DNA of 64,000 nucleotides from Glycera tridactyla (Eukaryota). The position numbers and the translations under genes were made by a program. Positions 58,401 through 63,618 of the stretch are shown here, one piece after another. The stretch lies in NCBI GenBank assembly GCA_965644265.1, contig OZ286461.1, positions 121,706,001 through 121,770,000 of the forward strand. Direction: 5' to 3'. Under the pieces are notes generated by a model. It was not told the origin of the DNA, searched no databases, and saw only the letters and a list, made by a program, of their open reading frames with translations. Within the stretch, counting starts at the first letter, position 1; every line of letters begins with the position of its first letter.

Positions 58401-61400
58401 ATCACTATAGTGATATGATGCATTCTGCTTGATTTAATTGATAACCGCTAGCAACTGATTTTGATGTCACAGTGTGGAGCGACAGTGAGGCTGGAGTGGG
58501 CTGGGTGCTCAATAATGCATTGATTGGATGCTTTACAAAGCTCAACACAAACATGAAACGCCAATAATCCTTTGTTAAACAACTGACAGAAAACTTTTTG
58601 ATAGTACAGTCAAACCTCGAGACCAACTCTCTATAAGACCACTTCTCTACATTGACCAACCTGAGCTGCAACCGTGGTAGTATTTTCAACAGTAAATGCC
58701 CTCTCCATAAGGACCACCTCTCTACAACGGCCACTTTTTGATGCGACCAGAGGCAGTCTTTATAGGGAGGTTGGACTGTATATTACTAATAATGCTCACT
58801 AGTTAGCAGTTCAGCATTGGAGATGATGGGCCAGAGTACATAATGGGAGCACATGAACCGGAAACACATCCTAGTCAGTTCTCTCATCAGGTGTGTGGGC
58901 ATCAGTCAGCCTGGTGATCCGGATACCAACCATACTGACAGGCCTAGTCTCACTTGCTGGTAAACCCAACTAACAACTTCAAAATCTATGCAGCCAAACA
59001 GATGGTTCCCAAGATGGTGAGGCTAGCTGATCATGCCTAAAACATGACCGGTGACATCACACTTTGCATACTAATGAGATGATTTCCTAACAAGATACAG
59101 TCAAACCTGCTCAAGAGACCATCTCTCTATACAAAGACTACCTGCCTATAAAAGCCACACTGAGCTTTTACTGATATAGTATTTCCAACAATAAATGAGC
59201 TATCAATAAAGACCACCTGCCTATAAAGGCCACTAATTGATGTGACCTAAGGTGGCCTTTATAGACAGATTGAATTGTATTAACCTTATTCAACAATGTC
59301 ATTATGTGAATGACTGCTGAATCAGAATGCAGACAAATGGCTATCAGTCCCGATTACTGCATGATATATACTTGTAAATGATGCTATTATCCTGCCTGTT
59401 GTTGCAGAATAAAGCACTGTCTATTGTCTATGACTCACGGTCAGAGGACATGTAGTTATCCATCGCATCCTCGTAGACCTGGATCTGTTCTCGAGCAGTG
59501 AGCCGATGAACTGGGAATGCCCTCTGAGCATCTGCCTCGCATTTGATCACCTTCACAGGCACTTCATACTCCAAATCACGATCACCAACTTTCCCCTTCA
59601 GCATCACACTTATGCTCTGATTGTTCACCATCTGTGATCTCTACAAGACATGAAATATCATCCAGGAAAGGTGTGCATGTGTGGGTTTGTGAGTGTGATC
59701 ATGGGCCTATTAGGTGCATGCATGCGCATCTGTGTGTGCATTATACATTGGTAAGTGGAAACAGGATGAGAGACAACCTGTCACCAAAACTTGTCTCTCG
59801 AAAAAGGTGGTCTCTTGTCAGAGGTATTTTTCACTATGTCAAATAATAAACATGCTGAACATCCATGAGTCAGGGATCTACGCTAAGGGTTGAACTACTG
59901 GAACAGGCAGGCAGATTTGTTGTTAGGGCAGGTGATTTTATCAGCCCACCTGCCCGATGGGCAGGTACCTAACCACTATTTAGTCTATGACATTATGCAG
60001 AAGGACAGGTGAAAGTGACAGGGAGGGCAGGTGAAAATCAAACTTCACCTGCCCGAAGGACAGCTGAAGAAAAAAGTTAATGTAGAGCCCTGTGAGTGAT
60101 GCTGAAACTGCTACAGTTGGCTCTTTTCCTCAGTATTTCATCCCAGTTAATGCTGGACAGCTACCAATTAGCTACGACACTTAACTTTCTTTTATCCTAG
60201 TCATATTTTGAGAAGACTTGATAGAAAGCTGTCCATCATCATATACATGTATTATTCTGCAGAGCTAATTGTGAATCCAAGGCTTGACATTGAGGTTTTC
60301 AGCCACTCATGCATGCATGCAAATGGCATAGAATTTTTAGTCTGCCCATGAATTCTACTTGTCCATCAGAATAAATATACATGTAGTTTATGGAGAAAAC
60401 TGCAGCTGTCCAGCAGACAAATTAACATGTAAGCCATGGATTTCCACTATTCCTGGACAATGGGACAGCCCTCAATGTCAAGCCCTGGAATCATGGAGAG
60501 GGGCCTTGTCCACATGAAAGCAAAATATATGTCAGTCCTCCAATAGGTGAAAAGGCAGACTGACATCTTGACCCACCTGATTGCACCCGTGGTACGTCTT
60601 TGCTGATTTAATGTTGCTAATCTGATCAGAAGACTAACTGAAAGCTAATGGCCGAAGCCCAAAATCCAACCATAATAGTCAAGTTTGAATATCCCAATTT
60701 TAGTCGAGACAAGAATGCTGCCTGATATTGATGCCTTACCTTGTTGGGAAATATGGCATACTGGACAAGTTTATCACCCGAGTATAGGGAGGGCAATGTT
60801 TCTGGAACATTTATCACATCATCCGAACCAGAAAACTTCCAGATTGTTTTCAGGTCTGTCACGGAATCCTGCATGGCACACATCAGTACCTGCATCACCT
60901 GTAACACCATGATAACATAGTAAACATCAGTACCTGCATCACCTGTAACACCATGGTGACATAGTATACATCAGTACCTGCATCACCTCTAACACCATGG
61001 TAACATAGTATGCATCAGTACCTGCATCACCTGTAACACCATGGTAACATAGTATACATCAGTACCTGCATCACCTGTAACACCATGGTAACATAGTATA
61101 CATCAGTACCTGCATCGCCTGTAACACCATGATAACATAGTATACATCAGTACCTGCATCACCTGTAACACCATGGTAACATAGTATACATCAGTACCTG
61201 CATCACCTGTAACACCATGATAACATAGTAAACATCAGTACCTGCATCACCTGTAACACCATGGTGACATAGTATACATCAGTACCTGCATCACCTCTAA
61301 CACCATGGTAACATAGTATGCATCAGTACCTGCATCACCTGTAACACCATGATAACATAGTATACATCAGTACCTGCATCACCTGTAACACCATGGTAAC

Positions 61401-63618: not shown

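What the first reader, a model, noticed from the sequence alone, without database searches (positions are those of the whole stretch)
60881..61870. A splice acceptor amplified into a 22-copy minisatellite: possible intron gain in progress or a poison array
Seen: on the - strand each 44-bp unit is 26 nt of intron end (..GGTGTTACAG) plus the first 18 nt of the VWA5A exon (GTGATGCAGGTACTGATG = VMQVLM). Only the innermost copy continues into coding sequence (CAMQDSVTD, aligning with VWA5A). Use of any outer AG gives [18 protein letters not shown] (or an earlier TAG), i.e. a premature stop. The only pyrimidine tract (TTGTTTCTCTCCTGTC) lies at the outer end, before ..GATACAG|GAGATGCAG at 61866. Inference: either about 22 decoy acceptors are skipped, or a 9-nt microexon (61858-61866, EMQ) is spliced via AG|GT to the last CAG|GTACTG so the array acts as a new intron (the tandem-duplication model of intron gain), or the allele is disrupted or tuned by copy number.
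Basis: partly seen in the sequence, partly recalled or inferred. Interest (0 to 1): 0.85.

Follow-up and report, generated by a model that had tools for sequence, protein, structure and literature searches.

The report
Splice-acceptor minisatellite in VWA5A-like intron
A 44-base piece spanning the end of an intron and the start of an exon has been copied 23 times in a row, yet assembled transcripts from four public runs use only the copy next to the real exon, so this is a harmless-looking "mirage" minisatellite of a kind already described in amphioxus.

Summary
TRF finds a 44-bp x 22.9 array at 60880-61885. On the minus strand each unit is 26 nt of intron end plus the first 18 nt (VMQVLM) of an exon of a VIT-VWA (VWA5A-like) gene. 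Homologues read ..LQAK|VMSVMKCAMQ.. without a gap, and one homologous genomic exon starts at the same point after cag and has no repeat. So the junction is old and the 18 nt are real coding sequence. All 22 outer AGs lead to a stop within 14-20 codons.

Transcript contigs from four public runs (two studies) are laid as 57890-58026 | 59438-59640 | 60740-60900. They leave the genome at the innermost acceptor. They read GTG (V), not GAG (E), and nothing lies on the two adjacent repeat units. In the assembled transcripts this supports "decoys are skipped" and refutes the microexon/new-intron reading. Rare NMD-bound isoforms cannot be excluded, because contigs drop minor forms.

The structure matches the "mirage" minisatellites of amphioxus (Adh3, troponin C, globins, PGBD5). 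It is the acceptor-side counterpart of the human F7 IVS7 VNTR.

I rate it a new member of a known kind, of modest interest. First-reader notes of this scan list many similar arrays in this genome, which other agents call annelid-like; neither point was checked here. Copy-number variation and assembly accuracy were not tested.

The parts
60880..61885 (-). 44-bp minisatellite, 22.9 copies. Each unit is 26 nt of intron end (..TTACAG) plus the first 18 nt of the exon (GTGATGCAGGTACTGATG).
   Evidence: TRF; unit table
60740..60898 (-). Coding exon of 159 nt ([10 protein letters not shown]...FPNK), phase 0 at both ends. Its first 18 nt form the exonic half of the innermost repeat unit. The working acceptor is ..gttacag|GTG at 60898.
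   Evidence: Translation. Homologue alignments. Transcript contigs laid on 60740-60900, joined to 59640, in four runs.
60899..61865 (-). Twenty-one near-identical decoy acceptors, at 60942 + 44n up to 61822. Each has CTGAT 29 nt upstream, pyrimidine fraction 0.60, and CAG|G or GAG|G. Each gives a premature stop if used.
   Evidence: No contig was laid on 60901-60990.
61849..61899 (-). Outermost, diverged unit (7 of 44 differences): ..ttgtttctcctctgtcaccatgctgatacag|GAGATGCAG. It probably keeps the older intron end with its pyrimidine tract.
   Evidence: The E codon is not seen in transcripts.
62200..62314 (-). Upstream coding exon (..[18 protein letters not shown]...GEERLQSK), end of the VWA domain, donor AAG|gtttgt at 62200/62199.
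   Evidence: Its last two letters, AG, explain why the contigs match on to 60900. The joint itself was not seen, because this exon lay outside the stretch that was laid.
59439..59640 (-). Next coding exon downstream. It is joined to 60740 and to 58027 in the transcript contigs.
   Evidence: Joints 59640-60740 and 58026-59438 in four runs
57890..58027 (-). Following coding exon (..[26 protein letters not shown]..). The contigs end at 57890, so the true exon end may lie lower.
63539..63618 (-). Coding exon further upstream ([27 protein letters not shown]..), part of the VWA domain.
   Evidence: tblastn with P0012; open frame through five exons; boundaries read from the sequence

Best explanation
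This is a "mirage"-type minisatellite. A 44-bp segment straddling an old, conserved 3' splice junction of a VIT-VWA (VWA5A-like) gene has been amplified in tandem to 23 units, most likely by replication slippage or unequal exchange. The segment is 26 nt of intron end plus 18 nt of exon start.

The array behaves as part of the intron. The spliceosome joins the upstream exon (..LQSK) to the copy next to the exon, at 60898, and the other 22 acceptor copies are absent from steady-state mRNA.

Shown: the array; the coding status of the 18 nt; the conserved intron position; use of the innermost acceptor in assembled transcripts of four runs; and a premature stop from every outer AG.

Inferred: why the innermost copy wins. 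All units carry the same local signals (a CTGAT branch-point-like motif at -29, the same pyrimidine content, CAG|G). The choice must therefore come from context. The likely sources are exon definition from the strong donor AAG|gtaagg 159 nt downstream, and NMD clearing any product of an outer AG. Because every acceptor is followed by GT (AG|GTGATG), a splice to an outer unit would also rebuild a 5'-splice-site-like junction (AAG|GTGATG). That junction could be re-spliced inward to give the same mRNA.

The array is still turning over. The three innermost units, including the working one, repeat the variant pattern of three units 308 bp further out. The outermost unit has escaped homogenisation.
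For: - Array.
- The 18 nt are coding and the junction is conserved. P0012 reads ..ERLQAK|VMSVMKCAMQPCVTD.., against ..ERLQSK|[15 protein letters not shown].. here. Genomic ORF fragments P0005-P0007 lose homology exactly before VMK. L002 reads ..ttgacag|GTGATGAAG and has no tandem repeat.
- Gene family: P0012 carries VIT and VWA Pfam domains, and its relatives are named VWA5A-like. The five-exon open frame of the window aligns to them at 34-40% over about 230 aa.
- Splicing: in X1-X4 one contig per run lies on 57890-58026 | 59438-59640 | 60740-60900 and then runs on for 140-468 letters off the stretch. Nothing lies on 60901-60990, and the only differing letter is 60787 G>A, a synonymous Leu change.
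- The eight runs that hold the locus hold 0.14-0.17 of the sampled words. That equals the exon share of the stretch (476 of 3151 = 0.15) and leaves no room for the array.
- Decoys give premature stops. Decoys carry the same signals as the working site.
- Block duplication and diverged outer unit.
- Precedent: mirages in amphioxus that do not disturb splicing (PMC3087553, PMC3902484).
Against: - The RNA evidence is from assembled contigs of low word depth (about 4-8). Contigs drop rare variants, so minor use of outer AGs is not excluded.
- Only the two innermost repeat units were in the stretch that was laid. I left the rest of the array out because read laying turns away long repeats. The joint to the 62200 donor was therefore not seen directly.
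- No DNA reads were examined, so copy number and assembly accuracy are untested.
- The reasons given for the choice of the innermost site are inference only.
- The outermost site has the best pyrimidine tract and is nearest the donor, so under intron definition it should compete. Its silence is not explained by any data here.
Confidence: 0.8

Rival explanations
1. Poison array. A fraction of pre-mRNAs is spliced to outer AGs, gets a premature stop and is degraded by NMD. Copy number would then tune the output of the gene.
For: All 22 outer sites carry the same branch-point-like motif, pyrimidine content and AG as the working site. Each gives a stop within 14-20 codons, well upstream of later exon junctions. 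The outermost site has the best pyrimidine tract and lies closest to the donor.
Against: No contig in four runs enters the array from the exon side. The runs hold only the exon share of the sampled words. In the amphioxus mirages and in human F7 the extra sites stay silent. There is no evidence of regulation. A selectively neutral array explains the same data.
Confidence: 0.1
2. Ratchet (recursive) splicing. The upstream exon is first joined to an outer unit. The junction AAG|GTGATG then acts as a new 5' splice site and is re-spliced to units further in, until the innermost is reached. The array is removed in steps and the final mRNA is the normal one.
For: Every unit (bar the outermost, GAG, and two GCG units) has AG|GT at the acceptor (ACAG|GTGATG). 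The rebuilt junction matches the consensus MAG|GTRAGT at 7 of 9 positions, read directly from the sequence. Dual-specific AGGT sites in tandem repeats are used in human UBC (PMC10809524). The final product is indistinguishable from direct splicing, so one search is compatible.
Against: There is no direct evidence. The +5 and +6 positions of the rebuilt donor are off consensus. The outermost unit has GAG, so it cannot enter the ratchet. Steps of 44 nt are shorter than usual animal introns, so steps would have to span several units.
Confidence: 0.12
3. New intron in the making. The outermost acceptor is used, the 9-nt GAGATGCAG is a microexon, and CAG|GTACTG..CAG|GTACTG removes the array. The protein would then read ..[13 protein letters not shown]..
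For: The sequence allows it and it keeps the frame. The outer site has the pyrimidine tract. A mirage-to-intron model has been proposed for amphioxus globins.
Against: The contigs of all four runs match GTG at 60896-60898 and match on through 60900. The only differing letter is at 60787. The intron position pre-exists in homologues.
Confidence: 0.02
4. Assembly artefact. The array, or its length, was produced by mis-assembly of a shorter repeat.
For: Tandem repeats are error-prone in assemblies. The amphioxus BflGb6 mirage was mis-assembled in a draft genome. No DNA reads were checked here.
Against: The units carry an ordered pattern of variants, including a 7-unit block duplication and a distinct outermost unit. 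That pattern is typical of a resolved real array, not of a collapsed or inflated one. Both flanks are unique, and the inner flank is confirmed by transcripts.
Confidence: 0.05

Closest known systems
"Mirage" minisatellites of amphioxus: Adh3 (Canestro et al. 2002, cited in PMC3087553), globins BflGb6 and BflGb9 (PMC3087553), troponin C and PGBD5 (PMC3902484)
   Same: They are tandem repeats whose unit spans an exon-intron boundary. Splice signals are duplicated in most units. The authentic copy is the one contiguous with the exon, and mRNA is spliced normally. BflGb6 is likewise an acceptor-side array (3' end of the intron plus 5' part of the exon). The boundary units escape homogenisation, as the outermost unit does here.
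   Different: This array has many more copies (23, against 3-6 in BflGb6) and a shorter unit (44 bp, against 150-160 bp). The host gene is VWA5A-like. The organism is undisclosed, and other agents of this scan call it annelid-like, so it may lie outside the cephalochordates. Length polymorphism and somatic instability, shown for Adh3, were not tested here.
Human F7 IVS7 37-bp VNTR (PMC1557585)
   Same: It is a minisatellite whose first element spans a splice junction, so the authentic site is followed by identical pseudo-sites that stay silent. The exon-proximal copy is the one used.
   Different: The F7 array is on the donor (5' splice site) side and has few copies. Its site selection was dissected with about 50 minigene constructs. 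Here the array is on the acceptor side and nothing has been tested experimentally.
Dual-specific AGGT splice sites and recursive splicing (PMC10809524)
   Same: Every unit has AG|GT at the repeated junction, arranged as a tandem array as in UBC.
   Different: In UBC the sites lie in coding repeats and produce variable monomer numbers. Here no use of a site as a donor has been seen, and the array is non-coding in the mRNA.
Intron gain by tandem duplication of an AGGT-containing exon segment (Rogers model, as cited in PMC3087553)
   Same: A duplication includes an AG|GT.
   Different: That model creates an intron where none existed. Here the intron already exists at this position in homologues, and the duplicated unit includes intron sequence.

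Membership tests
Mirage (splice-junction-spanning) minisatellite | Tandem array whose repeat unit contains both intronic and exonic sequence of one splice junction | tested here: met
   Each unit is 26 nt of intron end plus 18 nt of exon start. The 18 nt are shown to be coding by homologue alignment and by transcripts.
Mirage (splice-junction-spanning) minisatellite | The authentic junction is the terminal unit, contiguous with the rest of the exon | tested here: met
   Only the 60898 copy runs on into an open frame, and it is the one present in the transcripts.
Mirage (splice-junction-spanning) minisatellite | Mature mRNA is spliced normally and the repeats are absent from it | tested here: met
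   Contigs of four runs from two studies leave the genome at 60898-60900, and none lies on 60901-60990. The share of words held equals the exon share. The limits are that these are contigs and that only two repeat units were laid.
Mirage (splice-junction-spanning) minisatellite | Length instability or polymorphism between haplotypes or individuals | not tested
The block duplication within the array shows past turnover only.
Mirage (splice-junction-spanning) minisatellite | Host is a cephalochordate, the only group for which the papers I found describe mirages | not testable with these tools
   Organism names are coded. Other agents' notes call the genome annelid-like. The window's peptide is 34-40% identical to mollusc, nemertean, annelid and Branchiostoma proteins alike.
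Intron gain by tandem duplication | The intron position is new, that is, absent from homologues | tested here: not met
   L002 has cag|GTGATGAAG at the same point. P0005-P0007 lose homology exactly there. P0012 is contiguous across it.
Intron gain by tandem duplication | Transcripts use the duplicated AG|GT pair (EMQ microexon form) | tested here: not met
   The contigs read GTG and show no differing letter at 60897.
Recursive or dual-specific splice sites | A 3' splice site directly followed by a 5'-splice-site-like GT, so that splicing rebuilds a donor | tested here: met
   The junction is ACAG|GTGATG in 20 of 23 units (the outermost has GAG, two have GCG). The rebuilt junction AAG|GTGATG matches 7 of 9 consensus positions, read from the sequence.
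Recursive or dual-specific splice sites | Splicing intermediates or lariats that show stepwise removal | not testable with these tools
   Only contigs were available.
AS-NMD poison element | A PTC-containing isoform is detectable in RNA | tested here: inconclusive
   None was seen in the contigs, but contigs drop rare forms and NMD would deplete them. The stops themselves are confirmed.
VWA5A-like (VIT-VWA) protein gene | A VWA domain followed by the conserved C-terminal region, collinear with VIT-VWA proteins | tested here: met
   Five exons give an open frame of 235 aa that aligns to residues about 372-624 of VWA5A-like proteins, with E-values of 1e-39 to 1e-47. P0012 has VIT and VWA Pfam hits. 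The VIT part would lie beyond the window end and was not seen.

The most novel reading that the evidence does not exclude
The locus may be one of a large, genome-wide population of splice-junction-anchored minisatellites in a non-cephalochordate, probably annelid, genome. First-reader notes of this scan list many such arrays at both donors and acceptors. If junctions are truly enriched over other intronic positions, one of two things follows. Either a mutational process is seeded at splice junctions, or the splicing machinery picks the exon-proximal site so reliably that such arrays are nearly neutral. With 22 perfect decoy 3' splice sites, this locus would then be a natural acceptor-side counterpart of the F7 experiment on splice-site choice.
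Probability: 0.3. Interest if true: 0.6.

Novelty: new member of a known kind. Interest (0 to 1): 0.35.

Why it matters
On its own the locus is a clean and unusually large example of a known curiosity. It has 22 acceptor copies carrying the same branch-point-like motif, pyrimidine content and AG as the working site, and the mRNA is still made correctly. That makes it a useful natural substrate for asking how a 3' splice site is chosen among identical neighbours: exon definition, scanning from the branch point, re-splicing or NMD clean-up. Experimental work on this question has so far been on the donor side (F7). If the many similar first-reader notes in this genome hold up, the phenomenon called "mirage" in amphioxus would be shown to be common in a second, distant animal lineage. 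That would make its origin testable genome-wide. The more exciting readings of this locus (intron birth, microexon) are not supported.

Tried and rejected
- Microexon/new-intron reading: rejected, because the contigs read GTG, not GAG.
- Decayed older units in the G/T-rich intron part 61893-62199, or copies elsewhere in the window: none. The best local score was 24, equal to the best of 300 shuffles. TRF at a low threshold found only (ACC)n, (AG)n and a 13-mer.
- RNA structure that might hide the decoys (each unit has the palindrome ACCATGGT): the fold of the inner 281 nt is no better than shuffles, z = -1.6.
- Pfam on single exons: no hits, because they are too short.
- Exact look-up of the two window ORFs that cross the array borders: not on record.
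- Search for short protein fragments of the exon that might show other junctions: no candidates.
- ESM Atlas on the next exon: nothing meaningful.
My first guess of amphioxus, made from GC content and the mirage literature, is unsupported. Other agents' notes say annelid-like.
- Canestro 2002 (PMC117041) is not held in the paper library, so I cite it only through PMC3087553.
I laid 57700-60990, which includes only the two innermost units.
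Full report
**Observation**

The minus strand of 60600-62300 shows an upstream coding exon ending ..GAGCGTCTCCAGAGCAAG|gtttgt at 62200. It is followed by about 310 nt of G/T-rich intron. Then comes a run of near-identical 44-nt units that ends inside the next coding exon.

TRF reports 60880-61885, period 44, 22.9 copies, 95% matches, score 1830. Cutting the array in register gives 23 copies of the 18-nt motif GTGATGCAGGTACTGATG, each preceded by 26 nt ending in ..TTACAG.

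- Twenty-two units differ from the consensus at 0-2 positions.
- Four units have ..TTAGAG, and two have GCG instead of GTG.
- The outermost unit (61866) differs at 7 of 44 positions. It reads GAG, and its intron half is C-richer and is preceded by TTGTTTC.
- The three innermost units, including the one attached to the exon, carry the same three variant patterns as the units 308 bp (7 units) further out. A block duplication has therefore included the working junction.
- The unit occurs nowhere else in the window, and there are no decayed copies in the intron upstream.

**Is the 18-nt half really exon?**

Yes. The frame from 60898 is open for 159 nt ([20 protein letters not shown]...FPNK) and ends at a good donor, AAG|gtaagg.

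A HMMER search of the 53-aa exon against 1.84 billion representatives gave 13 hits.

- The full-length hit P0012 reads ..FVKDSERLQAK-VMSVMKCAMQPCVTDVTLQW... The window reads ..[31 protein letters not shown].., with no gap.
- Several short hits are ORFs called on genomic contigs. They lose homology exactly before VMK and read ..Q (cag) just upstream (P0005-P0007).
- I fetched one of these contigs (L002). It reads ..ttgacag|GTGATGAAGACG.. and has no tandem repeat.

The intron position, phase 0 before V-M, is therefore old, and the array sits on a pre-existing junction.

P0012 carries VIT and VWA Pfam domains, and its relatives are named VWA5A-like in molluscs, Branchiostoma, amphibians and others. 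Five exons of the window (63618-63539, 62314-62200, 60898-60740, 59640-59439, 58027-57890) give one open frame of 235 aa. It aligns to residues about 372-624 of these proteins at 34-40% identity. The gene runs off the window at the high-coordinate end, and its last recognisable exons lie near 32800 and 31500.

**Consequences of using a decoy**

Translation from each of the 22 outer AGs in the exon's frame reaches a stop after 14-20 codons, most often [15 protein letters not shown]-stop.

All units have the same local acceptor signals as the working copy. These are a CTGAT motif (fitting the general branch-point consensus CTRAY) 29 nt before the exon start, supplied by the "exonic" half of the preceding unit; pyrimidine fraction 0.60 at -22..-3; and CAG|G. 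The other confirmed acceptors of this gene are no stronger (0.35-0.70). The outermost copy has a 16-nt C/T-rich tract at -33 to -18 and a CTGAC at -46.

**RNA evidence**

The look-up of sequencing runs on 59300-62450 returned eight runs from two studies under two organism labels. They hold 0.14-0.17 of the sampled words. The three exons in that stretch make up 476 of 3151 nt, or 0.15. These are therefore transcript assemblies that hold the exons and not the array.

I therefore did not send the array. I laid 57700-60990, which contains the exon, the two innermost units and two downstream exons.

In each of X1-X4 one contig of 641-804 nt is laid as 57890-58026 | 59438-59640 | 60740-60900, and then continues for 140-468 letters that lie on nothing in the stretch (tables 5 and 8).

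- Both joints have GT..AG ends on the minus strand.
- No contig lies on 60901-60990.
- The two extra matched letters (60899-60900, AG) are what the upstream exon's end (..CAAG) would give.
- The only differing letter in the piece is 60787 G>A. It is in all four runs and changes CTA to TTA, so it is a synonymous Leu change.
- Codon 1 of the exon in the mRNA is therefore GTG (V). The EMQ microexon form would have shown a second differing letter at 60897.

There are three limits to this evidence. Contigs have low word depth (4-8) and drop minor isoforms. The joint to 62200 itself lay outside the stretch.

**What it is**

It is a tandem amplification of a segment spanning an existing 3' splice junction. 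It is carried as extra intron sequence, and the exon-proximal copy serves as the acceptor.

This is the structure that Canestro and colleagues named "mirage" at the amphioxus Adh3 locus. Ebner and colleagues found it in amphioxus globin genes, including an acceptor-side array in BflGb6. RT-PCR there showed normal splicing although most units keep AG/GT signals, and boundary units escape homogenisation (PMC3087553). Troponin C and PGBD5 of lancelet show the same (PMC3902484).

The donor-side human analogue is the F7 IVS7 37-bp VNTR. Identical pseudo-donors there stay silent, and the exon-proximal one is chosen (PMC1557585).

**How it most likely works (inference)**

The 22 decoys are locally equivalent to the working site, so selection must come from context. 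I consider the following most likely.

- Definition of the 159-nt exon by its strong downstream donor, which would favour the nearest upstream acceptor.
- NMD removing any product of an outer AG.
- A further possibility follows from the sequence. Each acceptor is followed by GT, so joining ..CAAG to an outer unit rebuilds AAG|GTGATG, which matches 7 of 9 consensus donor positions. That junction could be re-spliced inward to give the same mRNA. Tandem dual-specific AGGT sites are used in human UBC (PMC10809524).
- Nothing here distinguishes these routes.
- The array RNA has no unusual predicted structure (z = -1.6).
- The silence of the outermost site, which has the best pyrimidine tract and is nearest the donor, is the one feature I cannot explain from the data.

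**Rivals**

- Poison array with a tuning role: possible but unsupported.
- Ratchet splicing: possible, and not exclusive of the main reading.
- New intron or microexon: contradicted.
- Assembly artefact: unlikely given the ordered variant pattern, but untested.

**Context in this scan**

A word search of the scan's notes returned many first-reader titles from other pieces of the same genome that describe minisatellites made of a splice donor or acceptor. These include a 13-copy acceptor array in a transglutaminase gene and 36-38-copy donor arrays. In total 106 notes match "splice minisatellite". No follow-up of those notes was returned by my look-ups. They are leads, not evidence.

Follow-up agents on other findings call the genome annelid or annelid-like. 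I could not test this. Organism names are coded, and the protein identities do not discriminate between phyla. My paper searches found mirages described only in amphioxus.

**Verdict**

The locus is a new and large member of a known kind. I put interest at 0.35. The genome-wide pattern, if verified, would deserve more.

Noticed in passing
window 208-3231 (+): A cluster of box C/D snoRNA genes, all above Rfam gathering scores: three SNORD31 matches (208-277, 735-804, 3163-3231) and one match to the plant SNOR75 model (2365-2435). They probably sit in introns of a snoRNA host gene.
   Followed up: no
window 25000-26630 and 44634-45157: Two arrays of the same 145-bp satellite (11.3 and 3.6 copies). 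Each has a similar 31-bp, two-copy repeat about 220-290 bp before it (24714-24777 and 44280-44343). They look like two copies of one element with an internal tandem array, inside introns of the VWA5A-like gene.
   Followed up: no
window 47443-49072: A 338/170-bp tandem array (4.7 and 5.7 copies) that produces a series of spurious 130-176-aa ORFs on both strands.
   Followed up: no
window 61990-62130 (-): The intron part between the donor and the array is strongly G/T-rich on the gene strand, with (GGT)7 and a 13-mer repeated three times. It is not derived from the 44-bp unit (score no better than shuffles).
   Followed up: yes
window 60787: All four transcript assemblies, from two studies and two organism labels, read A where the window has G on the + strand. 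This is a synonymous Leu change (CTA to TTA on the gene strand), so the assembled individual differs from all the RNA samples at this site.
   Followed up: partly
window 58580-58800, 59020-59350, 59790-60120: Intron stretches with very high summed contig depth (hundreds to about 16000), many differing letters and many odd joints in the RNA runs. These are dispersed repeats expressed or present elsewhere in the genome, not this gene's transcript.
   Followed up: no
window 600-1052 (-) and 9890-10200 (-): Proline-rich ORFs (PPPRPPKPPPPRPP..) and a (GT)26 tract. They gave only low-complexity matches to the proline-rich tail of P0012, and their coding status is unknown.
   Followed up: no
window 54029-54192 and 63707-63973: Two runs of N (164 and 267 letters). 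I left them as they are. The second lies just upstream of the 63618-63539 exon, so further exons there cannot be read.
   Followed up: no
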